Assembly (NCBI GenBank): GCA_964187785.1
Contig: OZ076412.1
Location: 30,256,001 to 30,320,000 of the forward strand
DNA length: 64,000 bases
From: Amphiscolops sp. MND2022
Taxonomy: Eukaryota
Reading direction: 5' to 3'
A program made the translations under genes and the position numbers. The notes beneath the pieces were generated by a model that worked only from the letters and a program-made list of their open reading frames with translations, had not been told where the DNA came from and made no database searches. Shown piece after piece: positions 4,494 to 49,800 of this stretch. Positions within the stretch are counted from its first letter, which is position 1. The number at the start of each line of letters is the position of its first letter.

Positions 4494-5895
4494 TTTTGAG
4501 TCGGCGCTTTCATTAGAAAAGCAGACTACAGTAGTGTAGTAGTGGCTTTTGAAAGACCTCGAACTGACAAATTCTACAAACATTTCTATAACTTCACAAC
4601 ATATGTCTCTTGGTCTAGTGGATGAGTGAGTGGCTGTAGAGCAGGTGTACGTGGGTTAGAATCCTGCGCTTTACCAATATTTTATATGCTTGCAAAAATA
4701 GATGGTATAACAAAAGTTCGCCATTTGGGTTTTGTTCTCGCTCTGCGCGCAAAAAATCTTCATTTGATCAAAGGATACGCCTTCACTTTGCTATTTTTGG
4801 TTTAGAAAAATTGTTTTGCGAGTTCGAAGGGTTTACTGGGGTTTTCGGCACCATGTAACTTTTTTGGCGCGAGACATTTAACAAAAAATTCCATGAACAA
4901 AAATTTCAATCTGCGCATTTACAGTGGCTAGTTTTTTTTTGTCAGAACACAGCTCTTTTCTGTATGTTCCAGTTTTTGGTGTAGAGGTTAATCGGTTGTA
5001 GCGGTCGCGGGTTCTATTCACTGCTTTAACCAGCAGTTTTTATACTTTTGCATTTTACTCAAGAGGAGGTGGAGGTTCGAAAATATTCCGCTATATCCAA
5101 ACTTTTGACGTTATTTCCGAACTATATTGCGTTTTACTATAGAAGAGGCGGAAGTTCGAAAACAAGCGCTCCCATTTGTCCGAGCACTCTCGAAATTTTG
5201 ACGTTATATCCGAAGTTAATAGCGGTTTACTAAGGAGGAAGAGAATAATCAAAATAATTTCTCTATATCCGAATATTGACGTTATATCCGAAGTAAATTG
5301 CGTTTTCGACGGAGGAGGGCGAGATTTGAAAAAGCACTCCCATGTTGCCCAGCACCCTATATCCGAACTTCTGGCGTTATATCCGAAGTAAATTGCGTTC
5401 TACCAAGGAAGAGGCCGAGCTATAGCCCAATTGTTTTTTGAAGACCAGCGAACTGGAAAATTTTTTAAAGTTAACTTAGTACCATTTGCCACTTGGCCCA
5501 GGGGTTAACTCAGATTTCCAGGCCTAGTGACGGGGTCTTACATACAAGAGTCCTCGGGTTTGAGTTTCGGACTACACCAAACTTTTTTGTTAGCAAAAGT
5601 AGAGGGAAGACCAACGTCTCTCCCCTTTCTGATTTTTTTCGGCTCTATGCGACTTTTTTCAGCAGTTTTTTCAACCGAAGTGCCTGCCTTTGATTTTGGC
5701 AGGAACAAAGCATTTTGCGAGAGAAGAGGGACATCTTGGGTTTTTTCGGCACAAAGCGACTTTTCAAAGAATCTTTTCAAGAGGAAAATTATTCAAATGA
5801 TTCGAAACGTATTTCCCTAAAGTTTGGTGTTTTTGAGCTTTGTTCAGAAAAATGTTCTTGAGTGGGGCGCCGACTTGAGCCATTCCCGGCTTATT
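4494..5895 (+). mobile_element. Composite HINE-family copy with tRNA-like modules and ~90-bp tandem array
   Basis: 5' GAGTCGGCGC at ~4499; 3' GGCGCCGACTTGAGCCATTCCCGGCTT at ~5865-5892; internal A/B-box-like segments at ~4605, ~4985, ~5490. Confidence 0.55.
5060..5420 (+). repeat. Diverged ~90-bp tandem array, about 4 units (core TTGACGTTATATCCGAAGT)
   Basis: Core visible at ~5105, ~5197, ~5276, ~5372; related units at 6500-6590, 11420-11520, 30440-30550 and inverted at 58280-58430. Confidence 0.75.
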
Positions 5896-5992
5896 GATTT
5901 TTCCAGTCTGTAAGGTCCTGAAAGGTCCGCTTTTTACAGAAACTACTAAAACTACTGAGGCCAACTTTGGTGCAAAGGGTCCCTCCTTTCAT

Positions 5993-6745
5993 TTTTAGTG
6001 GGCGCCTTTTCCCCTAAGAAAAAAGCCCGACTATAACAGTGGGTAGTTTTTTTCAGGTCACTCTGAATGGTCCACTTTTTGTTCATCTGTTCGAAAAAAA
6101 AGTGTTGAAGTTCGGATATAACGTTTCAAAGTTCCCATGTGACGTTTTCAGAGTTCGGATACAACGTTTCCAAAGTACGGATGTAACGTTTCAAAGTTCA
6201 GATATAACGTTTTCAAAGTTCGGATGTTAAAAATCACCGGCTTGTTTACTTTTTAACGTAAGCTACAAAATCGGACGAGACTAAAGGGTCCCCCCTTCCA
6301 AATTTTTTGGCACTGAGACTTTTTCGAAATTTTTAAAATGTCTCCTAAAGGTCCCCTTCGATTTGTTTTGGAATTCTGCAACAAAATTAATGTTGAAAAA
6401 AAAACTGAAAGGGTCCTCCCCCTTTCAGATTTTTTGGCACTGTTAGACTGTTTCAAAATTTTTGTCTGATATTAGGTTTTGGTATTATATATCCAATAGT
6501 TTGTTTCAATGCTATCCGAATTTTTGACCTAATATCCGAAGTGAAGCGCTATATCCGAACACTTGTCGTTATATCCGAACTATGTTGCGTTTTTGATTTC
6601 AATTTATTGCCCCCTTCAAAATTTTTTAAATTTTTGCAGCAAACTAAATTTTCAAAAGCCCAAAGGGCCCCATTTGTAAAATTTTAAAAACTTTGCGTCT
6701 TTTGAGCCTTAGATATAGCGCCGACTTCAGACGTTCCCATCTTGT
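5993..6745 (+). mobile_element. HINE-family copy
   Basis: 5' TTTTTAGTGGGCGC...AAGCCCGACTATAACAGTG; 3' CTTAGATATAGCGCCGACTTCAGACGTTCCCATCTTGT. Confidence 0.7.
6108..6232 (+). repeat. 21-22 bp minisatellite, about 6 units (GTTCGGATATAACGTTTCAAA)
   Basis: Units read directly; reverse-complement relative of the ATATCCGAA core. Confidence 0.8.
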
Positions 6746-7104
6746 AATATTGACACATGAACTGTAATATTGATAAAAAGTTCAATAGTTGTCCGTTTGT
6801 ATATTCGAATCACTTGACTCTTTTTGAACCTTGAGCAGTACGCTCACTTGGATCAGTCCCGGCTTGTTTCATTTTATACTCGCCACAATTGCACAGACCG
6901 GTTGCGGAACAAATTATCACGTAATGTTTTGGCAGTTAATCAGTGAAAACCTCCGTGAAAAATGGCACTACGTGGAGCTTTTGAAGCGTTTAGGCAAAGA
7001 AAATGCACCTTATTGGATAATGAAATAAACCTTTGGGATTTTTAGGCACTAAGAGATTTTTCAGAATTTTCTTTTTAAATTGTTTAAATGTAAACTTTAA
7101 ATGT

Positions 7105-11759: not shown

Positions 11760-12522
11760 CTTAAAGGATACGAATAAGACTCGGAAACCACTTTTTACCC
11801 AAATGGAGACACAAACAATCTGTTTTTGAAAATTGTTTTTTTTCGGAAAAGTCTTAAGTGTCAAAAATGGTTTCAGCTAGCACAACTACTTTTTCTCGAG
11901 CCGAAATCAGATATGAAAGCGAGGGAGTGACCCTTTGACCAAATGAAAGTTTCGGGGAAAAAGACGCAGAGTGCCGAAAAAGAAAAACTCACAGAGCCGA
12001 AAAGGCTGAACAAAGGTTGTTTTCCCCCATCATTAGAAAAACTCATCTGTTCCACAGGATCAAAAAGTAACTGAGAGGCCACCCTCAAGACTCGAGGAAC
12101 ATGTTTTTATGCAGAAAACCTCAAAAAACAAAATTTTGTGGATTTTTATTACTTCAGTCAGTCGCATAGTAACGAAAAAACCAAAAGTAGCCATCTATGC
12201 TTGCAAAATGCTGAAAATTGAGGGAGGGACTTTAGGTTTGGAAAAAATGCATAGTGCTGGTAAAATTCTTAAGGGGTACCCTTTTGTCTCCCCGTACTTT
12301 TTCGCAAACATAAGTTCTTGGTTTAGTGCCAGACCCGAAACCATGAACCCCTGCGGGAAATCCGCGTTGACCACTAGGCCAAGTGACTGATTGACTTTGC
12401 AAAATTGGAGAATTTTCGGTAGAACTACTTTAGTGTTTTGGACAGTTCAGTTGTATCGGAAACAAACTGACGAAAAGCAATGACTAGAGTCGCTCTTTCT
12501 AAAGAAATGAGCTGACTTAAAA
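11760..12522 (-). mobile_element. HINE-family copy (5' part) with tRNA-like module
   Basis: Reverse 5' end GAGCTGACTTAAAA ~12510-12522; minus-strand TGGCCTAGTGG...GGTTTCGGGTCT at 12330-12385. Confidence 0.5.
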
Positions 12523-17700: not shown

Positions 17701-20700
17701 ATTCAGTTTTTCGTACACGTGTTGAAATACTCAATCGGTCATTCCTTTCCGTAACTAGTTATGCAGGGGGAGGAGACCCAGCCTCTGCAACTTACACTCC
17801 CCATTCGTACAGCTCTCACCAGGCGTTTGTCATGGGAGAAACAACGGAACATTTGAGCGCATCTGCCAGTGTGGTCGTCGGAGAGAGGCGCGGAATACCT
17901 TGTGATCAAAGTGAGTCGTGCTTCATTCTGTGGAACGAGATATTTTGAAGTTCACTTTGAAAATGGATTTTCTAAATTTTTCTTTTATACTTTTGGCTTT
18001 TTAGAAGAGCTTGTAAGGTCATTGTATCATCACGTTGTTATCATTAATTCCTTAACTTTTGATCTTCATTGTTTCAGTTGTGTAGAAAAACATTGAAAAA
18101 AGATGCTACGTCACAATTTTGAACCATCTTATAATATAATGATCGCATTCTCAGTTTAAAGGATTATGGATAACTTCTGTTTGTTTTCCCCAGGTGAAGA
18201 GCGACAAGATGGTCGCACTGAGATGGTACCAGTTTCCACGGCGAATGCTTTGGCAGCTAGAGATTCGCAGCATCTGCACAGCTACGGAGACGACAGAGAT
18301 GCGAGCTCCCCTGTGCCCGAAGTGGTAGATGTGTTCAGGTCTGACCGTCTGTTTTTTTGTCTTTCCTTATTCCGTAACTACTATCTGTTTTACCTCTGTC
18401 CAACTCAGGTCTCACCAAAAGCGGAACAATGGATGATTTCATTCCATTTTCATTTTCCGCTGTATTCCCGATGGAAGGAAAATTTATCTTTCGGCCTCCT
18501 GTTTTTCCCTAATTTTTCTTTGAATCGTTTTTTGACTACAGTAGACACCTTTTCTTTGGCCGTATTTAATATCTTGGAAAGGAAACATAATCTCTCTGTC
18601 GCAGAAAAAAGCGTTTGCCAAATTTTGTCAGGCTTTTGGGTGGGCTGGGTCGTCTGTTTGTTAGTTACATGCGCCGGTATGCAGGAAATTGTGGGTTGCA
18701 TTCCTTCAAATGCCTCATTTGTCTACTTTATTGACTACTTTCACAAAAAGATGTAGTAACTGGCATATCGTATGTATTTGTTATATACACGTCATTTTCG
18801 ATTTTTTTACTGTCAATATGACATATTTATATACATTGTACGGAATAATTCGCATATAAATCAATTTTTAGTCGGCGCTTTTCGAAGAAAAACGCAGACT
18901 ATAGTAGTGACTTCTTTTTTTTTTAAGACCAACGAACTGACAGATTTTATAAATTTTATAAGTTGGTACTAAACCGGCGCGAACACTAAACTGTGTCACG
19001 CTACTTCACTGCCACTTGGCCACTACGACTTTTTCGAGGTCTGACGAGCAGAATGACATGGGTTCGAGTCCCGCCATGACCAAAATTTTTTTGTGCAAAT
19101 TTGTTTTTTCGGCTTTGTGAGACTTTTTTCGCAAATATCTCCAAATGGTCCACCCTTCATTTTTTTGTCTATTTTGCAAAAGAATGGATGTTAAAAAACT
19201 TCCAAAGGGCCCCATTTTACATGTTTTGGCACTATGCGACTTACGGGAGACCAAAAAAATTTAAAAAATTTCAAAAAAAAATCTGAATTTTTTTTTCAAT
19301 TTTTCCTCAAACGGGTACTGTAGAAGAGAATACTTGACACTTTGAAGTCCTTTTGTTATTTTTGAGCCTTAGATATGGCGCCGACTTGGGCCGTTCCCGG
19401 CTTGTTAACCTATAGTAGTGGCTTTTCTAAAGGCGCGAAGTGACAGATGTAATTAATAACTAATCAAGACAGTAAATTCTAAGTGTATTGTGCTGCAGGT
19501 CAACGAGACAGCAATATACTCCCCCAGCAGAGAGGTCAGCTGAGTTTGCGGACCCTGACCTGACCACCAGTGACCACGAGGAGTTCGACTCCACCTTTGT
19601 CGCCATCTCACAGCCACCAACTGCATCTCTGCTACTCTCTGGAGCTACCTCAACCGCCACTGCAGGACTACTCTCCTCACAAGCAGATGCTTTTGTTCAG
19701 ACCTCGGCCTCTTCGTCCAATGCCCAAGACAGTGCGTTCTCAAAAGTTCTTTTCAATCAAGTCATTCAAATTTCTTCATTCACATGTACATGTTTCAGAT
19801 GTAAGATAATGGAATTCATATATTGGTCACTGCAGGTTTGAAACAATGTCGAAATAGTGTGAGTTGAAATGTTGAATGATATTTGAAGGACCAAAAATCA
19901 CAGCTCGGCAAGGCAATCACTGGCGTTATAAGGGGTCTCACTTAAACTGGTGACGTTATAAATGGCTTACACTGTGAAACTTTGTCAAGGCGTTATGTGT
20001 AGAAAACAAGGAATTCATCAAATCTGTCAAGAAAAGGTTCAAAAAAGTCCAAAGTTTTATACTTGAATCTATGAAATCTCAATATTAAATATTTTCTATA
20101 ATTTTTGGTGGATGTTGCTTCAATCACTTGATAGTGGGATTAGTTTTTCTCGATAATATTTTTAGTCGATAGTAGACATTCAGTTTTTTTAGACAATACA
20201 TGATCGGGTTGAAAGTTTCTGTGAGAAGTGTCTTGGAAACTTCTGTTTTCACAAACTCTGCAAAAATTTATCTTTCCATTTAAAATATGGGTATTCGAAG
20301 AACCTAAGTGTGTCAGTGGGCTCTTCAACCCTATTTCTCAAATCAATAATTGCGAAATGAAACTTTATTTTCAAAAAAAACTTTCAGATAGACAATGGAA
20401 GCGAAAATACCTGATCAGTTTTTCTGAATACATTCCCGAAATAATACTAATAATTTGGATATATGGTGTTTTTGTTACATGTTCTAACAGATAATAATAA
20501 TAAATATTGCTCAATTTGAAAAACAAGCCGGGACCGGCCCAAGTCGCTCAAAAATAGCAAAAGGACTTCCAAGTGTCAATTTACAGTACTCGAAAATCGA
20601 AAAACCAAAAAAAATGGACCGAGTGGCGCGCCGGGGCCCGCTAGCGCGAGCCCCTGGCGCGCTAAAAGGGGGACACTTCCGAAATTGTCAACATTTTTGT

Positions 20701-23700
20701 CGCAGTTGAAGGGGGACCCTTTGGAGAAAAAACCTTTCGAAAAAAAGTCTCTTAATGCCGAAAAACTGAAAGGGGGGACCCTTTGGGATTTTCAAACACC
20801 TAATTTGTTGTCAAATATAAAAGAAATTGAATGGGGGACCCTTTGGAGAGAAAAAATGTTTAGAAAAAAAGTCTCACAATGCCGAAAAACTGAAAGGGGG
20901 ACCCTTTGTGGTTTTTCATTATCCATTCTGTCGCAAAACATCAAAAAATTGAAAGGGGTATTTTTGTTTTCGGGAAAAAATCTCACAGTGCTGAAAAAAA
21001 ACTGAAAAGGGGGACCCTTTGGGATTTTCCAACATCCATTCTGTCGCAAAACAGGGAAAAAAATGAAGGGGGACCCTTTGATCTCGCCCGGTATGGTATG
21101 TTACGCGGGAAAACAGAAAAAACCTTTTTGGTTTAGTTCGCTAGGCCAAATGGTGCAATTTGGTGCAATAATATTTTGTAGAACTTTTAAGAACTATTTT
21201 AAGAACTAATCATAAACGAAACGCGCTATCATCCTGGCAAACGTGAAATCATACGGATATGATATGAAACATTTTGGATTCAGTTCGCTTTTCATAGTTT
21301 TGTTAAGTGAAAACGTAAGAATTTGAAGTGAAATTTTTTCACGAAAACAGTCGCACAGTGCCGAAAAACCCAAAAGGGCCCTCTAAACTCGCAAAAGGCT
21401 TTGTCCTTGTTGAATCAAATATCACTAGGGGTCCTTTGATAAATTGAAATTTTTTCCAAAGTCGAACAGTGTCGAAAAAAAAAACAAAAGGGGGTTCCCT
21501 ATGGTCTTCCCTTTTATCTTTGCCAGCTTGATGAAAATTTCGTCTAGCACAGGATTCTATCCCACTTTCTCCGGATTCCCTGGCCCCATCACCTGGCAGA
21601 GAAACTCGTGTTAACCTCTAGAGCAGCAGCTATTGGCAGAAACTGGTAGAAAAAATTCCACTACGAAACGAAAAATATAGGCTATTTAAATGAGTGTTTT
21701 ATAATTTGAAAATTTTACATCATGTTTACCATTATAATCGTCAGGGCAGTAATAGATTAAGTTCAACATGAAAATCAAGAGTTGTACTTGTGTATTTACC
21801 ATGTGTGTTTTGAATATACACATTGTCGGAATTTCACTCATTAGAAACGGGGTCATTTTGTTACATTTCGAACCCAATTTTAGCTCGTTTACACAATGGA
21901 GTGGCGAACATGGCTGGTGCCAGTTGCAGTGTGGACTTGGGGCGTCACCATGCGAGTGTGGGAGGAACTGCTTCAGAGTGTTCTCCCGGAGACAGAGACG
22001 GGTACACTTCTCACGACGAAGCCTCTTGGCTGATAGACCAACATGCCGACAATGTGCCAATCCATCCCCTCACTCAACATCGAAACTCCCTCTCCTCTTC
22101 CGACATGCACACTCCAACATCCAGATCAGTCGCTTCCTGGGACCTCATCCGGTTCCCTCGTTCCTTCTATGAGGTAAAATTTTTCTCGTTGAGATGATAG
22201 TTTGGTTGTCTAGCCTGGTTTGAAGCGGGAAACAGTTTTGCCCTTGGTGCTCTCATGGCTTTGCTACTCTGTTTGCTTCCAAGACTTTATGATTGGATTC
22301 CTTCGGTCACAGACGGCAATCTACAAAAGTTTTCATTTCCCGTTCAATTTCAAGTAGTAGTTTTCTGTAGTTTTTGATAATTTTTCCGTAAATAGTCAAA
22401 TTTGAAAATTTAGTTCAACTTGTTCCTTGACAGTTTTTGTCGGCGCGTTTTCCTTTAAGGAAAAGAGCTCGACTATTACAGTGACTAGTTTGTTTTCGTC
22501 AGACTACAGAATGTATGCGTAGTGGACACGTTTTACAGAACTACTAAACTACTGGACCGGAAACGCATCTAAGTTAGGCCAAAGGGTCCCCTTTTCATTT
22601 ACACCATTTTAACGTAAGATACAAAACGGGACGAGACTATAGCCCCCCTTAACGTAACTCAAGTTTCAAAAAGTCCAAAGGGTCTCCCCTCTCAAGTTTT
22701 TGGCACTATGAGACTGTTTCGAAATTATTTTTCGTTTTTTTTCGAAAATTTTTTTGATGTCTCAAAGGGTCCCCTCAATTTTTTGATAATTTGCAACATA
22801 CTGGACTTTCAAAAACCTCCAAGGGTCCCCTTTTTACAATTTTGCGCCTTTTCAGCCTTAGATATACAGTAAACCCTCGATTTTCCGCCACGCGATTATC
22901 CGCCAACTTTGGTCATCCGCCATAAATCTACCGGGACATTTTAATATAACACCCGCGTCTAAGCTCCCTTGATTTACCGCCACTCTCACTTATCCGCCAT
23001 AATTTGCGCTGGACCAATGGTGGCGGATAATCGAGGGTTTACAGTAGCGCCGAATTTAGACGTTCCCGTCTTGTTCGTTATTATTGAGCACGCTTAGCTC
23101 GTGAATTTTTAAATCACTGTTTAGATATTTGATTTGAATAAGTTAGTGATTCATCACTACTACAACTAAGCTACCAAAGTCATGTGAACAAACTCTGAGA
23201 TCATTGTTTTTCAATCAATAAAGCCTGAATGGTAAGTCAGAATTTGCCGGCAAATACTTAAAATTTAAAGAAGTCAAAAGCTCTCTCTATATCATGGTGC
23301 CGCAAAATGCTACAGAATCTACCCAGCAACAAGCAGATCTTGAAACGAGTCTTCACAGCATAAAAGCTAAAATCTCTTCCCTTCATTGCATTTTTGCTCT
23401 CCCCTTCGCATAATCATTCAACAGAATTTGTTTCTTTTTTTGTAATTCTTAAAATCTCCTTGAAGACAGATACTAAAATCACGAAGTTATTTTGTAGTTT
23501 GTCCAAGTTAGTTATTTTTCTTTTTTAAAACGGGTGATGTTAATACCCGGTCTAGAGGTGCATATCGTGGCTTGTGCACACGATATTTCAATGAGGCAAA
23601 AACATCATGGATTCAATTAGAATTACAACAGATCAAAGTAACCGCCTCAGTCAAATTATAACGCTAATGGAGGAACGTTTGAGTGAAGTTCAAGCTTTGA

Positions 23701-29700: not shown

Positions 29701-32700
29701 ATATTTCACGTCATTTCCTTACGTCATTGTTTGTTGTTGGTTGCATTTATCCCAATCCACATTGTAGTCTTCCTGATATGTTAAATACAAACGTTCTTGC
29801 AACCGTTTCACTTTGCAAGGTAGAAGTATTGATCTTAGAAACTAATCTGAAGAAAGTGGTTTTTTAAAAGGAGCTAAAATAGAAGAATAAAGTTTGTTTC
29901 GCGGGGCGAACGCCGAATAAGCCGGGGGTCGACGCTCTTTCTGGTACGTTATTTGCAGCCCAATGGTCTAGCAACATGATATAGTGCCGATGTGTCCGCA
30001 TTCAATTCATAGGCTGCTTTTAGTCGGCGCTTTTTTTGAGGAAAAAGCCCGACTATTACAGTGGGTAGTTTTTTTTCGTCAAACTACATAGCTGACCCTG
30101 TATGTACCTCTTTTTAGTACAGACTTTAATCGGTTTAGAGGGAACCCAGCGGTCGGGAGTTCGAGTCCCTGCTTCAGCCAGAAACTTTTTCTTGCGTTTA
30201 CAAAACCGGATGAGACTGAAGGATTCCCCTTTCAATGTTTTTCGGCACTGAGACTTTCGATATTTTTTTCATGTCTGCAAAGATCCCCCTTCACTTTTTT
30301 AATAGTTTGCAACAAACTGGAGTTTCAAGAAGCCCAAAGGGTCCCCCTTTTACATTTTTCGGCAATATGAAACTGTGTCAAAATTCTCATTTTTCTGAAA
30401 TTAGGTTCTCAATAGATACCCACAAATAATTTGTTTTCAATGTCCGAAATTTCGACTTAATATCCGGAGTAAAGCGCTATATGCGAATTTTTGACGTCTT
30501 ATGCGAACTATATTGTTTTACAAGGAGGAGGGGGAGGTTCGAAAACAGGTGTTTTTTTTTAAAAAAAAACGCCCTACGCATATTTTAGAAACTATATATT
30601 TTAGCGTTTTTTGAGCCTTAGGGATAGCGCCGACTTTAGACGTTCCCGTCTTATTGTTATTTTGAACGAACACTTGGTAAAGATGCTTAAATGTTCTTGT
30701 TTTTCTGTAGGTGGCTGACAAAGAAGACGACATTCTGCACAGAGAAGGTGGATACAGTTATTGTCTGCCGCACCACTCTCATCACATTACGTCTCAGCCC
30801 CCGCTGTTCCCTTCTGCTCACACTCACGGTGCTTCTACTGACCCCAGTTCTAGGTACACGCATTTCATAAGCACCGTTTCAAAGCTAGATTGTGCCTAAA
30901 TACTGATCAAAAGCGAAATCCTTGTTTGAATTACTATCTGAAACTACTCACCAATTTACATATTTTAGTTTTCAAACTAATGGGTTGAAATTCTGGGGGC
31001 CAAAAATAAGCGAGTTTCACTGAAGAAGACGCTCGCTGAGCACCATAGTGTTTTTCCGCCCTGAACTGCTTTGGCGACATATTTTTATGACTCGAGAGTA
31101 GCCAATAAACTATAGAAAATGTTTGGTTCTTTTCGCTTCATTTCAGGCTTTTATCGAAAACATTCAGTGCTCTCTTTTTAAAAAAAAGTATGTTAAGTAG
31201 CTACTTTTTGCCGGTTAACTAGGGATTTTCCTATCCACAAAAACATGCATTAGTTGCATGAAACTATCAATAATTGAGAAAAACGGGGCATTTTTCCAAA
31301 AAGTAGAGATATCTCCATGAAGACACGAACCTCATTTTTTCACCATTAAACTTTGTGAAAGATTCTCTATCTTTGGAGTATAAAATTTGGGGATGAAATA
31401 CGGACGAAAAGTTTATTCTATGATTGTATGAAATGTTTGCGAAGATATCACCAACACCATTCAAGCTCATCTGCACAACAGCAGTCACAGTCATCCGCTT
31501 CCAACAATGTCGATTCTTGTTTCCTTTTTGACCCCAATGAAGTGGAGACTCAGCTGGAGAACCAACTGGGGGCATCCGCCTGTGGACCCACTGCGGTTGT
31601 CAATGTACTGGTGAGTATCACTGCCCTTTGTCTTATAGAAATATAACGTTTTCCATGAATTGTGCAAAATTCTAAATCGAAATGTCGTGCAGTGTTTTGA
31701 GGAAGAATTAATAATTGATGGATTCGGAGACCTCTGCGACCTGAGAATTGTTTGAAAAGCTGTAGATTGTTAGACCTTTCGAACAAACAAATGAGAGCGT
31801 TGATTTTTGTAGAAATTTCTGTTGCAATGTCTGTATACTGAGCTGCAATGAATATTTCTAATTGTGTATGTGTGTGTTTTGAAGAGGATAATGGGATACC
31901 AAGTGAAACCGTACTTTGTGGCCAGAAGAGTGGACTTCAGACAGAGAGACAACCTGGCCCCCATGCCCGAGTACCTTATGTCCAGAAGTGTGGCTGGTTC
32001 CACCCATGAAGATCTTATCAGAGGTTAGTCAAGTCATTATACTATATGAACAATACTGTGTTTGTTCGTTTCTACTGGCTCATCCGGACATTTTCAAAAG
32101 CTAAAATACTTTGTCGCAAGTCTTAGTCGCTCATATATTTACATGTTTCATAGATTTGGATTTTTCATTTCCCGCCCATATTTCGATATGAAAAAAGAAA
32201 ATTAACTTTTATTAGTTAAAAATTTGTCATGTTCAAATTTCATAGTCAAATTGAAGGACTTTACTCATAGAATTCAACTGTTATAAAAGTAGTTTTGTGT
32301 GATATGTATTTGTAGAGATTTTTGGACGTTTTTGGTCGATCTCAAAATGCATAAAAAGCCAAAAATTGATTGTGAATTGTGAATGATTTTTGCAGTTTTC
32401 AAATATATTCGTAGGTTAGATTATCCCAAAATTTTCAGGCCTATATTATCCTAAATTATCGAGTCTTGCTACGTTTTTTTCCGTTCACGTTATTTCTTGC
32501 TGCCTTTTTTTACCTTGTTTCTCAAATCAAGGCCCCAAATGAATTGAAAGGTCTAGTTTCCACGCTCTAGCCTTCAGAAAATGTAGTGGTGTGGAAATGT
32601 CGCCTTCAGAAAATTTAAAAAATCATGTCTGCAAATTTCTATAAAATTTGATTCTATACCGAGAAACTTTTATATATGATATTCTTTTTCATTTATTTTG

Positions 32701-43597: not shown

Positions 43598-44007
43598 TAT
43601 TTAAGTCTCAAATTGCGCTGTCTCGAAGATACTAGAAGATTGTAATTATGATATCCTGAAACAGCCCAAGTCGGCGCCCCGTTCAAACAGCCTAAAGTGT
43701 TATAACTATGCAAAGGAACACTTTTGTGAGAATTATCAAATTTACAGTGCCGGAGATACCCATAAGACTCGTGAAATGCTGTCACCTTAACGCATTACCG
43801 TATTTTTTTGACAACTCAAACTTTTTAAAAAAGTCACAGTGCCGAAAAACAAAAAGGGGACCTTTCCGCTTGAAAGACGCTTTTTTGAGCCGAAAATTTT
43901 TCCAGATTTGAGGGAGTACCCTTGGACCAAATGACACTTTTCAGAAAAGTCGCACAGTGCCGAAGTCCCCACAATTATTGAGAAAACTCAATAATCCCAC
44001 ATGAGTA

Positions 44008-44305
44008 AACAAGCCGGGAACGGCCCAAGTCGACGCCGTATCTAAGGCTCAAAAACAGCAAAAGGACTTCCAAGTATTCTCTTCTACGGTACCGGAAAAA
44101 AACCCAAAAATCAAACCGAATTGGCACACCAGAATCGACACTTTGAAATTTTTCATCCATTCTGTCGCAAATCATCAAAAAAAATTGAAGGAGGGCACTT
44201 TTGGTGAATTTTTTTTAAAAGTCTCACAATGCCGAAAAAAATGAAAGGGGGACCCTTTGGGATTTTTCAACATCCGTTCTGTCGGAAAACGCGCCGACTA
44301 AAAAC
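44008..44305 (-). mobile_element. Short, internally deleted HINE copy
   Basis: Reverse 3' end AACAAGCCGGGAACGGCCCAAGTCGACGCC; reverse 5' end GCGCCGACTAAAAA at ~44291-44304. Confidence 0.7.
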
Positions 44306-45749
44306 AGAGTTCACCCTCACGACGAAATCGGTTTTAATTGAGACTCGAATGCGGGTACTTCTGCATCTCCGACCTCGCCACTAGGCCTGGTAATCTGCTT
44401 TAACCGCAAGCTTATTTAGCAAGCTCATTAAATTTATAAACCTGAAATTTATTTGTAAAAAACGTTACAGTGTGACGTTAGAAAAAAATAACCCTTTTAA
44501 GAGTCATGCACATTTTTCTAAAAATGTCACTGCCCCCAAAAAAACCTTTAAACGGCTTTTTCCTTATTCAAATGTCAACCGAGGCGCTGTGGCAGTGTGA
44601 TTAATTTCGTATACTTTGCCAAACACCTTTGGAGGAAATCGGACACCTTCCAGTCTCAATTGACGAAAAGTATCGTAATATTTTAAAATCGAAGTCTCTT
44701 TTGATCTAATAACTGGTTAATGCTCTTAAGTGTATAGTTCCAAAATTTGAAAAAGGTGTTTTCCTTGCCATTTTATCCAATATATGCATGAAATATCGGG
44801 TATAGGGAATTGTTGTTATATTTGTTATTACAAAACTGTAACATAACTGTTTAAGCTGAACAAAAATTGGCTGCTCTTTAGGTTGTGCCAACAAATAATT
44901 TACTTTTCTCCAGCTTGAAGCATAAAAACGCCATAATAATTTTTTCGAAACTGAGCAAAAGCCGCATAGTGCCAAGAAACAGAAGAAGGTGACCCTTTAA
45001 GCTTGAAAAATGCAATACTTGAACTGAAAGCATCCACAAACAAAAAAAAAGAAACCTCAAGTGAGTCAGAAAAGTTATCAAAAAGCTCGCAATTTGCCGA
45101 AAGAAGGCGAGTGGGAGGGTTTACCTTTTAGTCGCCTTTTTTATTTCAGCTTGAAAAGTAAGAGTTAGTGGGAGGCTTTTGCCATTCCTGGATGCAGTTT
45201 GGATCTTGCACAGGGTCTCTCAACTCAATTCTTCAGAAAAACCCAAAGTAGTCAACTAAAAAAATTCCTAACGAAATTCTATTAAAGTCTCACAGCGCCA
45301 AAAATATCCAATGGATGTGGCTTTCCTGATTCGAAACGCGTTTCTCTGAAAAAAAAACAAAAAAATCAGCGAAGAGTCTCTAGTGGACAGAAAAACATCG
45401 TGAAATGTATCACAGAGCCGAACAAGCCTGAAGTCTTTGCCATATGCTTAAACACCATCATTGAAAGAACTCATCAGTCCCACGGTATCAAAAAATATTC
45501 AATGACTTCACTCTCAAGACTAGAAAGACGTTTCAATGAACAAAGCTTGGAAAACCAAAACTTGGGGAACATTTTTTCCGAATAGAAAACAAACTTTCGA
45601 AAAAATCTTCGGTAAATCGCACAATGCCTGAATGCCCTAAGGCTGCCCTCTATGCTTGCAAAACGCTGATTCTTTTTTTTTAAATTAAAGCGAAGGCCCT
45701 TCCGTACACCGATTTCAAATAGTCGGACAGTCATGCGTCAGTCGTGATG

Positions 45750-49297: not shown

Positions 49298-49800
49298 GTA
49301 GTCGGCGCATTCTGTGATAAATATGCCCCACTATTAAAATGACTAGTTTTATAGTCGGTGCTTATTGTAACAAAAATAACCCGACTCTTACAGTGAAAAG
49401 TGTTTGTCACATCGCAGACCTCAGACTGGTCCGCATCGTGACAACCTTTGTTCATTCTGCCACTTGACTTAGATGTGAGAATGAGCGCTTCCCAAGCAGG
49501 AGGTCGTGGGTTCGAATCTGGCTCACGACAAAAATTTACAATTTTTGCGATTCTTTCTCCAAAGGTCAATTTTTGGCTACTCTCGGGACTGGGCTTTCAA
49601 AAAAATATATCTATTCCTCCCAAAGTCGTTCGAATTTCCCGTGTTTTTACTTTTTTGAAAAGACGTCTTTCGACCCTGAAAGGTCTTTGTTTTTTGGTTC
49701 CATGCGACTTGTTTTTCGCAAACAACTTCAAAATTTTTTCACTATTTTGGGGCTTCGGTTTCCAGCTGAAAAAGTGCTTTTAGAATACTTTTGGACACTC
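49298..49800 (+). mobile_element. HINE 5' portion with tRNA-Gly-like module; right end approximate
   Basis: AGTCGGCGC at ~49300; GAGAATGAGCGCTTCCCAAGCAGGAGGTCGTGGGTTCGAATCT at ~49477-49519. Confidence 0.55.
49459..49529 (+). pseudogene. tRNA-Gly(CCC)-derived degenerate sequence (SINE-like head), not a functional tRNA
   Basis: Loop TTCCCAA and B-box GGTTCGAATC resemble tRNA-Gly; anticodon and acceptor stems do not pair. Confidence 0.5.

What the first reader, a model, noticed from the sequence alone, without database searches (positions are those of the whole stretch)
4603..4672. tRNA-like Pol III promoter modules carried inside putative rolling-circle elements
Seen: A-box-like TGG(T/C)CTAGTGG and/or B-box-like GGTTCGA(G/A)TCC segments at ~4605-4670, 4985-5030, 5490-5560, 12330-12390(-), 19012-19082, 30100-30180, 44325-44395(-) and 49459-49529, within or abutting HINE-family sequence and usually followed by a T-run. 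The 49459 copy resembles tRNA-Gly; T-arm pairing survives in some copies (GGGA-GTTCGAG-TCCC) while cloverleafs are broken. Inference: a SINE-head/Helentron chimera, i.e. a DNA element dispersing internal Pol III promoters. It could make short ncRNAs from introns or provide TFIIIC insulator sites. This is one of the two best candidates for an undescribed system here.
Basis: partly seen in the sequence, partly recalled or inferred. Interest (0 to 1): 0.7.

Follow-up and report, generated by a model that had tools for sequence, protein, structure and literature searches.

The report
Decayed tRNA piece inside rolling-circle passengers
The tRNA-like box motifs are real: they are worn copies of one tRNA-derived piece, about 80 bases long, carried at a fixed spot in a very abundant family of protein-less rolling-circle transposons, most likely as passive cargo rather than a working RNA gene.

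Summary
The motifs are at the stated coordinates and exceed chance. They are not tRNA genes. ARAGORN finds none, and Rfam finds no tRNA match at E<=10 in the window or in 20 related loci. The best copy scores 12.4 bits against a 29-bit threshold.

The segments are homologous copies of one tRNA-derived module of about 80 bp: A box, Gly-like anticodon-loop relic, variable loop, T arm with B box, 3' acceptor-like strand, then a T-run. The module sits at a fixed place in the left flank of Helentron-type non-autonomous elements (HINE/DINE-1-like). The genome holds at least 15,503 of their 5' ends. About 4,648 carry an exact B-box core at the module position; reversed-pattern controls gave 0.

The module is not an independent SINE insertion. 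It has a constant position, no tail and no target-site duplication.

It looks like inherited cargo:
- The commonest lineage (about 43% of a positional sample) has deleted the B-box half and still spread.
- The youngest lineage (99-100% identical copies) has a perfect B box but a degenerate A box followed by a T5 run.
- Within one family the B box is no better kept than other positions.

Other agents of this scan reported the same feature elsewhere in this genome. Verdict: a new variant of a known kind, of modest interest.

The parts
4606..4685 (+). tRNA-derived module, the best-preserved copy in the window. A box TGGTCTAGTGG at 4611, B box GGTTAGAATCC at 4654 (43 nt apart), T-run 15 nt after the B box.
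   Evidence: Module HMM E 5e-18; box table; relatives at about 80% identity sit in HINE left flanks elsewhere.
4495..5900 (+). Composite HINE-type element holding three modules (4606-4685, about 4977-5030, 5489-5589). 5' subTIR at 4498-4507, two kinds of internal tandem repeats, 3' subTIR at 5867-5876 followed by a palindrome. Ends are approximate.
4977..5030 (+). Degenerate module of the 30100 type (A-like TGGTGTAGAGG, B-like GGTTCTATTCA), preceded by a truncated 5' block (CAGTGGCTAG plus T-run).
   Evidence: 69% identity to 30060-30190; box table; weak tRNA-Arg HMM hit at 4999-5019, E 4.4.
5489..5589 (+). Old module with a duplicated A-box region and a decayed B box (GGTTTGAGTTT), then ACCAAAC and T6.
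   Evidence: Module HMM E 3e-4; about 100 genome relatives at 75-80% identity.
12314..12386 (-). Old module with a perfect A box (TGGCCTAGTGG at 12381-12371) and a decayed B box. The host element is degenerate, with a 5' block remnant near 12480-12520.
18866..19411 (+). Complete young HINE of about 545 bp: terminal T-run, 5' subTIR TAGTCGGCGC (18869-18878), IR GCAGACTA, T10, spacer, module, T7, tandem-repeat units, 3' subTIR GGCGCCGACTT (19376-19387), palindrome GCCG-TTCC-CGGC, and the end ...CTTGTT.
   Evidence: Boundaries come from 7 copies with unrelated flanks and no target-site duplication. 34 of the 40 scored genome matches are 100% identical over the module and the other 6 are 99%. The 5' hairpin has a folding z-score of -3.0.
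19012..19096 (+). Module of the young family: degenerate A-box position (TTGGCCACTACGA) followed by T5, perfect B box GGTTCGAGTCC at 19061-19071, then CATGACCAAAA and T7.
   Evidence: (E 2e-9).
21526..21640 (-).
   Evidence: Module HMM E 8e-5; sequence.
30018..30656 (+). Complete HINE of the 30100 type: 5' subTIR at 30021-30030, IR, T-run, spacer CGTCAAACTACATAGCTGACC, module, tandem repeats of two kinds, 3' subTIR at 30627-30636, palindrome AGACG-TTCC-CGTCT.
   Evidence: Homology with 15 genome copies starts at 30015-30030 in 11 of them and, in the 3 that run to the 3' end, stops at 30655-30664.
30131..30185 (+). Module of the 30100 type. Only the 3' half is tRNA-like (AACCCAGCGGTCGGGAGTTCGAGTCCCTGC...CAGCCA), followed by T5.
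   Evidence: tRNA-Arg HMM positions 37-64, E 0.014 here and down to 2e-5 in family members, always in the same register. At least 1773 first-look candidates in the genome.
44340..44400 (-). Old module fragment (A-like AGGCCTAGTGG, B-like CATTCGAGTCT). A short HINE without a module (about 44000-44303, minus strand) lies directly downstream of it, its 5' T-run starting about 36 nt after the B-like box.
49459..49538 (+). Well-preserved module of the 't' type: CCACTTGAC, A-like box, anticodon-loop relic TTCCCAA (Gly-CCC-like), variable loop AGGTC, T arm with GGTTCGAATCT, then T-run. Two nested 5' blocks lie upstream at 49299 and 49352.
   Evidence: Module HMM E 1e-20; relatives.

Best explanation
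**What it is.** The segments are decayed copies of a single tRNA-gene-derived module of about 80 bp. Its parts, in order, are: an A box with D-loop, an anticodon-loop relic, a variable loop, a T arm with B box, a 3' acceptor-like strand, and the gene's own T-run terminator. The module became part of the left flank of an ancestral Helentron-type non-autonomous element (HINE). Since then it has been copied passively, as DNA, by rolling-circle transposition.

**Shown here.**
- The module has a fixed position and in-register homology across diverged HINE lineages.
- The hosts have HINE anatomy.
- Insertion is into T-runs without target-site duplication.
- The module has been lost or truncated in several successful lineages.

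**Inferred.**
- The origin was DNA-level capture of a tRNA gene or pseudogene. The module shows no CCA end, and the T-run follows the discriminator position after 3-4 A.
- The module is neutral cargo, not needed for mobility.

**Side effect.** Lineages that keep the module have scattered several thousand exact B-box cores, each a potential TFIIIC site. Whether any of them is bound or transcribed is unknown.
For: **HINE anatomy** matches the published descriptions (PMC4067079, PMC7492417). The features are a 5' subTIR TAGTCGGCGC, a complementary IR 8-24 nt downstream, central tandem repeats (29 motif matches against 0.19 expected; 124-bp period), a 3' subTIR, a palindrome, and T-run insertion without target-site duplication.

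**Abundance.**
- 15,503 exact 5' blocks, reversed-pattern control 0.
- An exact B-box core lies 115-207 nt downstream of the subTIR in 764 + 2366 + 1518 cases, controls 0.

**Fixed position.**
- In 28 of 30 copies of the 30100 family, the module follows either the 5' block or a nested HINE 3' end sitting in the same T-run.
- About 11 of 12 't'-type copies are in HINE context.

**Single origin.** The lineages align in one register from CCACTTGGCCTAGTGG to GACCAAAA, a T-run and ATGCTTGC.

**tRNA derivation.**
- An HMM of this genome's own tRNA-Arg(UCU) matches the modules in one register (positions 37-64), down to E 2e-5 in 255 kb.
- RF00005 is the only Rfam family hit on the L042 copy. The alignment is full length and the anticodon loop reads UUCCCAA.

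**Cargo rather than function.**
- The commonest 5'-block type, about 43 of the first 100 positional matches, carries CCATTTGGCCTAGCGAA joined directly to CTGGACCAAAA. The middle and the B box are deleted.
- Other lineages lack the T arm.
- Within the 30100 family the B-box window ranks 42nd of 152 windows for conservation.
- The youngest family has a T5 run between the A and B positions.
Against: - No detector calls any copy a tRNA. The best Rfam score is 12.4 bits against a threshold of 29, and consensus sequences do not restore a cloverleaf. 'tRNA-derived' therefore rests on partial sequence similarity.
- The donor isotype is unresolved. The loop relics look Gly-like in one lineage and Glu-like in another, and that comparison rests partly on my memory of tRNA sequences.
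- The B-box block is the best-conserved block among the lineages that keep the module and is exact in the currently active family. This leaves some room for function at the level of master copies, although those lineages were found by looking for the box.
Confidence: 0.78

Rival explanations
1. Functional Pol III or TFIIIC module. On this view the B box, with or without the A box, is kept in some HINE lineages because it recruits TFIIIC or Pol III. It would then produce a short RNA ending at the T-run, or act as an ETC-like boundary site. Either could help the element, for example by keeping chromatin open at master copies, or could be co-opted by the host.
For: - The B-box core is exact in about 4,648 elements at a fixed position, controls 0.
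- It is perfect in the youngest, 99-100% identical family.
- It is the most conserved block among module-bearing lineages despite containing a CpG.
- A T-run follows within 14-22 nt in most copies.
- One window copy, at 4611-4664, has both boxes at 43-nt spacing.
Against: - The most abundant lineage spread after deleting the B-box half.
- The A box is absent or degenerate in the two largest B-box-bearing lineages, and T4-T5 runs lie upstream of the B box.
- There is no excess conservation after insertion.
- There is no stable fold.
- The between-lineage conservation is biased, because those lineages were found through the box.
Confidence: 0.12
2. Independent insertions of a tRNA-derived SINE into or next to HINEs.
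For: - The genome is rich in tRNA-like sequences: about 118,000 first-look candidates for RF00005.
- It holds at least one other tRNA-like repeat outside HINE context.
- In 6 of 30 copies the module follows a HINE 3' end rather than a 5' block.
Against: - The module keeps the same distance and the same flanking sequence on both sides across lineages.
- There is no poly-A, microsatellite or LINE tail and no target-site duplication.
- The '3'-end context' is explained by nested HINE insertions into the T-run that follows the 5' block. This is seen directly by comparing L086 and L087 with the uninterrupted L093 and L094.
Confidence: 0.04
3. Chance resemblance: short GC-rich motifs in a repeat that happen to look like A and B boxes.
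For: No tRNA detector reaches its threshold. Relaxed ARAGORN calls are barely enriched at the modules: 7 observed against about 4.4 expected.
Against: - The similarity extends over 28 nt (anticodon-stem 3' strand, variable loop and T arm) to the genome's own tRNA-Arg, at E 2e-5 and in a constant register.
- The A box, the 43-nt spacing, the B box, a 7-nt acceptor-like stretch and a T-run occur in tRNA order.
- RF00005 is the only one of 4227 families hit on the L042 copy.
Confidence: 0.06

Closest known systems
HINEs / DINE-1 (non-autonomous Helentrons; Thomas et al. 2014, PMC4067079; Yang and Barbash 2008, PMC2374699)
   Same: - 5' subTIR a few bases from the end, with a complementary IR just downstream.
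- Central tandem repeats.
- 3' subTIR followed by a short palindrome.
- Terminal T's, insertion into T-rich sites, and no target-site duplication.
- Very high copy number.
   Different: DINE-1 was explicitly reported to lack Pol III promoter consensus sequences and any similarity to tRNAs (PMC2374699). Here the left flank contains a tRNA-derived module.
Cg_HINE elements of the Pacific oyster carrying satellite-like repeats (Vojvoda Zeljko et al. 2020, PMC7492417)
   Same: - Modular build: a left flank with subTIR and IR, a variable segment, an array of 100-170-bp repeats, and a right flank with subTIR and palindrome.
- Families that share flanks but differ in internal parts.
- Elements with two arrays.
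   Different: That paper does not mention tRNA at all (0 occurrences). The sequence families differ. Whether the oyster left flanks hold a similar relic was not testable, because the supplement held here lists only the repeat arrays.
tRNA-derived SINEs
   Same: A tRNA-related segment with A and B boxes whose cloverleaf is no longer detectable, dispersed in thousands of copies.
   Different: - The SINE head is at the very 5' end and drives Pol III transcription of the whole element, which is copied through RNA by a LINE. That leaves a tail and target-site duplications.
- Here the segment is internal and is followed at once by a T-run. It moves as DNA inside a rolling-circle element.
Gene and promoter capture by Helitrons (established knowledge of the superfamily)
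   Same: A host gene fragment incorporated into a rolling-circle element and amplified with it.
   Different: The captured piece is a Pol III gene, together with its terminator, sitting in a Helentron-type non-autonomous family. I found no description of this in the held literature.

Membership tests
HINE (non-autonomous Helentron) | Subterminal inverted repeats of about 11-15 bp, with the 5' one a few bases from the end | tested here: met
   5' (T)TAGTCGGCGC and 3' GGCGCCGACT(T). There are 15,503 exact 5' blocks in the genome.
HINE (non-autonomous Helentron) | Short IR complementary to the 5' subTIR just downstream (DINE-1 type), and a palindrome after the 3' subTIR | tested here: met
   The IR is GCAGACTA or GCCCGACTA, 8-24 nt downstream; its hairpin folds with z -3.0. 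The palindromes are GCCG-TTCC-CGGC and AGACG-TTCC-CGTCT. The fold z-score of the 3' end alone is not significant (-0.8).
HINE (non-autonomous Helentron) | Insertion into T-rich (TT) sites without target-site duplication | tested here: met
   Seven near-identical copies with unrelated flanks start in a T-run and end in ...CTTGTT, with no flanking direct repeat. Nested copies interrupt the T-run of other HINEs, as shown by comparison with uninterrupted paralogous sites.
HINE (non-autonomous Helentron) | An autonomous Helentron (Rep-helicase-endonuclease) sharing the termini | not tested
   The genome has 152 Helitron_like_N matches, several with long open frames. Their flanks could not be fetched.
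tRNA gene | Cloverleaf recognised by tRNA detectors (Rfam RF00005 at 29 bits or more; ARAGORN) | tested here: not met
   0 ARAGORN calls and no RF00005 match at E<=10 in the window or in 20 loci. The best score is 12.4 bits. Consensus sequences are not called at default settings.
tRNA gene | Internal A box (TRGCNNAGTGG) and B box (GGTTCGANTCC) 30-60 nt apart, with a T-run terminator | tested here: inconclusive
   This is met within one mismatch per box by the 4611-4664 copy and by lineage consensus sequences. Most copies and the largest lineages keep only one box.
tRNA-derived SINE | tRNA-related head at the 5' terminus of the element | tested here: not met
   The module starts 100-190 nt inside the element, after the subTIR, IR, T-run and a conserved spacer.
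tRNA-derived SINE | LINE-related or A-rich/microsatellite tail, and target-site duplications | tested here: not met
   The elements end in a subTIR plus palindrome and have no target-site duplication.

The most novel reading that the evidence does not exclude
A rolling-circle DNA transposon family has seeded this animal genome with several thousand B-box (TFIIIC-type) sites, and a smaller number of complete A-box/B-box/terminator units. Some of these would be bound by TFIIIC or transcribed by Pol III. Helentron passengers would then be doing what tRNA-derived SINEs do in mammals, namely spreading boundary elements or short non-coding RNA genes, but by a DNA route.
Probability: 0.1. Interest if true: 0.6.

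Novelty: new variant of a known kind. Interest (0 to 1): 0.3.

Why it matters
The result shows that Helentron-type passengers can pick up and mass-copy a Pol III gene fragment, which the classic DINE-1 work said these elements lack.

It has a practical consequence for annotation. Such elements can be mislabelled as tRNA-SINEs or as tRNA pseudogenes, and they inflate counts of tRNA-like sequences.

It would matter more if the thousands of dispersed B boxes bind TFIIIC, because that would be a DNA-transposon route to spreading boundary sites. The present evidence points to neutral cargo.

Tried and rejected
- **tRNA detection.** ARAGORN at default settings and Rfam at gathering and E<=10 thresholds found no tRNA at any module. 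Relaxed ARAGORN thresholds gave mostly noise. Running ARAGORN on lineage consensus sequences gave nothing at default and only sub-threshold calls with inconsistent isotypes.
- **SINE-insertion reading.** I first took the HINE 3' end found before some modules as a sign that the module starts a separate element. Nested-insertion evidence rejected this.
- **Within-family conservation test of the B box.** No excess was found.
- **Oyster HINE supplement.** It holds only repeat arrays, not left flanks.
- **Literature.** Searches for tRNA-like parts in Helitrons, Helentrons or DINE-1 found nothing comparable.
- **Donor tRNA.** A pattern search for genes sharing the D-loop and B box gave only 3 matches, one of them a tRNA-His, so the isotype stays open.

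Full report
**Observation**

The window is eukaryotic: 39% G+C, no N, and part of a 1.07-Gb assembly at C4:30256001-30320000. All eight listed segments are present.

Both box patterns exceed chance:
- B-box pattern GGTTCGARTCC with up to one mismatch: 6 matches against 1.55 expected.
- A-box pattern TGGYCTAGTGG with up to one mismatch: 5 matches against 1.10 expected, reached by none of 100 shuffles.

None of the segments is a tRNA gene.
- ARAGORN finds none in the window or in related loci.
- Rfam finds no tRNA at the gathering score, nor at E<=10 in the whole window or in 20 loci with relatives.
- Searching 181 bases around the best-looking copy (L042) gives RF00005 as the only family. The score is 12.4 bits against a threshold of 29. 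The alignment is full length and the anticodon loop reads UUCCCAA. A second copy gives nothing.
- As single strands the modules fold no better than shuffles, with z about 0.

**The host elements**

The repeats that hold the segments have the complete anatomy described for Helentron-associated interspersed elements and DINE-1 (PMC4067079 and PMC7492417):
- a few terminal T's;
- a 5' subterminal inverted repeat, TAGTCGGCGC;
- an inverted repeat complementary to it 8-24 nt further on (hairpin z -3.0);
- a T-run;
- a left-flank core;
- tandem repeats of about 115-125 bp that carry TTTCGGCACTGTGAGACTTT (29 matches in the window against 0.19 expected; TRF period 124);
- a 3' subTIR, GGCGCCGACTT;
- a short palindrome (GCCG-TTCC-CGGC or AGACG-TTCC-CGTCT);
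- the end ...CTTGTT.

Fifteen genome copies overlap the element at 30018-30656. Homology starts at 30015-30030 in eleven of them, and in the three that run to the 3' end it stops at 30655-30664. Seven near-identical copies of the element at 18866-19411 have unrelated flanks, start in a T-run, end at CTTGTT and show no target-site duplication.

The exact 5' block (subTIR, loop, IR, AGTG) occurs 15,503 times in the genome. The reversed control occurs 0 times. The genome also has 152 matches to the Helitron Rep domain, several in long open frames.

**Position of the module**

In 30 copies of the 30100-type family (88-93% identical, at least 1773 first-look candidates), the module always follows the same spacer, CGTCAGACCACAGAGCTCACC. 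Upstream of that spacer:
- about 20 copies have the 5' subTIR/IR block;
- 6 have a HINE 3' end;
- 2 have other sequence.

The 3'-end context looked at first like evidence for a separate element. It is explained by nesting. The young element is found inserted precisely in the T-run after the 5' block of other HINEs (L086, L087). Uninterrupted copies of the same site exist (L093, L094), and many such nested 5' blocks appear in the pattern lists.

Copies of the 4603 type and of the 49459 type elsewhere in the genome also lie in HINE left flanks.

**One origin**

Copies of the 49459 type ('t') and of the 4603 type ('m') align along the whole module. So do representatives of the young family, of a 'c' lineage, of the 30100 lineage and of three old window copies. 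The shared register runs from CCACTTGGCCTAGTGG, through a variable middle, to CGTGGGTTCGAnTCC, about 12 more bases, GACCAAAA, a T-run and ATGCTTGC.

**tRNA derivation**

From tRNA gene arrays found with RF00005 I built HMMs of this genome's own tRNA-Arg(UCU) and tRNA-Lys(UUU). The Arg profile matches the modules in one register, positions 37-64. That span covers the 3' strand of the anticodon stem, the variable loop and the T arm. The E-value is as low as 2e-5 in 255 kb, and nearly all hits fall on modules.

The 't' consensus shows, in tRNA order:
- TGGCTTAGTGGTTAGGATG (A box and D loop);
- TTCCCAA (a loop with U33, CCC and A37);
- AGGTC (a typical variable loop);
- GTGGG-TTCGAAT-CCCGC (a T arm that pairs);
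- seven more bases, one further base, and then AAAA and T7.

There is no CCA, and the T-run stands where a tRNA gene has its terminator. I therefore infer capture of a gene or pseudogene as DNA, not of a processed tRNA.

The acceptor and anticodon stems do not pair even in the consensus. The donor isotype is open. The loop relics look Gly-like in one lineage and Glu-like in another (L013:2921-2964), and my comparison with textbook tRNAs is from memory, so it is only a lead. A pattern search for genes with the same D loop and B box found only three places.

**Promoter or cargo**

The box table for the nine window copies shows the following.
- Only 4611-4664 has both boxes within one mismatch at 43-nt spacing, with a T-run 15 nt after the B box.
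- The young family has 34 of the 40 scored copies 100% identical and the other 6 at 99%, with about 978 candidates. Its B box is perfect, but its A-box position reads TTGGCCACTACGA and is followed by T5. That T5 would stop Pol III before the B box.

The 'c' lineage has GGTTCGATTCT and no A box.

I sampled 5' blocks unbiased by position, using the first 100 matches on contig 1. About 43 belong to one type whose left flank reads CCATTTGGCCTAGCGAA joined directly to CTGGACCAAAA. The whole middle, including the B box, is deleted. Several other types lack the T arm.

An exact B-box core lies 115-207 nt after an exact subTIR in 764 + 2366 + 1518 = 4,648 cases, with reversed controls at 0. That is roughly 30% of intact 5' ends, with some double counting from nested copies.

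Within the 30100 family the B-box window ranks 42nd of 152 for agreement with the consensus, so it has not been protected after insertion. Among lineages that keep the module, the B-box block is the best-conserved part. That comparison is biased, because those lineages were found through the box.

**Not tested**

**Known or new**

- Yang and Barbash wrote that DINE-1 has neither Pol III promoter consensus sequences nor similarity to tRNAs (PMC2374699).
- The two HINE papers do not mention tRNA.
- Searches of the held literature found no tRNA-like part described in Helitron or Helentron passengers.
- Within this scan, other agents have already reported the same feature on other DNA of this genome and read it the same way. 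I reached my reading before seeing those notes, but they are not independent evidence.

**Verdict**

This is a tRNA-gene-derived module inherited as cargo in the left flank of a very abundant HINE superfamily. It is a new variant of a known kind, of modest interest, with an untested possibility that the dispersed B boxes bind TFIIIC.

Noticed in passing
L053-L082 (G000 C7:5.23-5.34 Mb, C1504, C8:47.91-47.97 Mb): There are very large head-to-tail arrays of tRNA genes: tRNA-Lys(UUU) about every 193 bp and tRNA-Arg(UCU) about every 305 bp. ARAGORN made 412 calls in 30 loci of 3 kb, giving 151 distinct sequences. Some Lys-body copies carry changed anticodons (UUC, UGU, AUU, GUU, UCU, UUA).
   Followed up: no
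L045:2366-2435, L002:1116-1185, L018:1745-1814 (-): A different tRNA-like repeat that is not in HINE context. Its upstream flank is conserved, and it matches the genome's tRNA-Arg profile over the full length (E 2e-4 to 1e-3). It is possibly the head of another repeat family.
   Followed up: partly
window 49299-49400; L086, L087, L110, L115: The T-run directly after the HINE 5' subTIR/IR block is a preferred target for further HINE insertions. This produces stacked 5' blocks and 3'-end/left-flank junctions.
   Followed up: yes
window 5060-5440 and 30440-30545: A second kind of internal tandem repeat, in units of about 100 bp containing GGAGGTTCGAAAA and TATATCCGAA. Its GGTTCGA words look like half a B box but belong to the repeat unit, not to a tRNA-like module.
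   Followed up: partly
G000 C1:73.4-76.5 Mb and other places: There are many Helitron-like Rep matches inside open frames of about 2,376 aa, clustered on contig 1, and others of 1,320 aa and about 2,300 aa. These are candidate autonomous rolling-circle elements that I could not read.
   Followed up: no
window 6108-6227: A 22/43-bp tandem repeat (AAGTTCGGATATAACGTTTTCA) lies inside the HINE at about 5993-6748. It is also seen in the left flank of L095.
   Followed up: no
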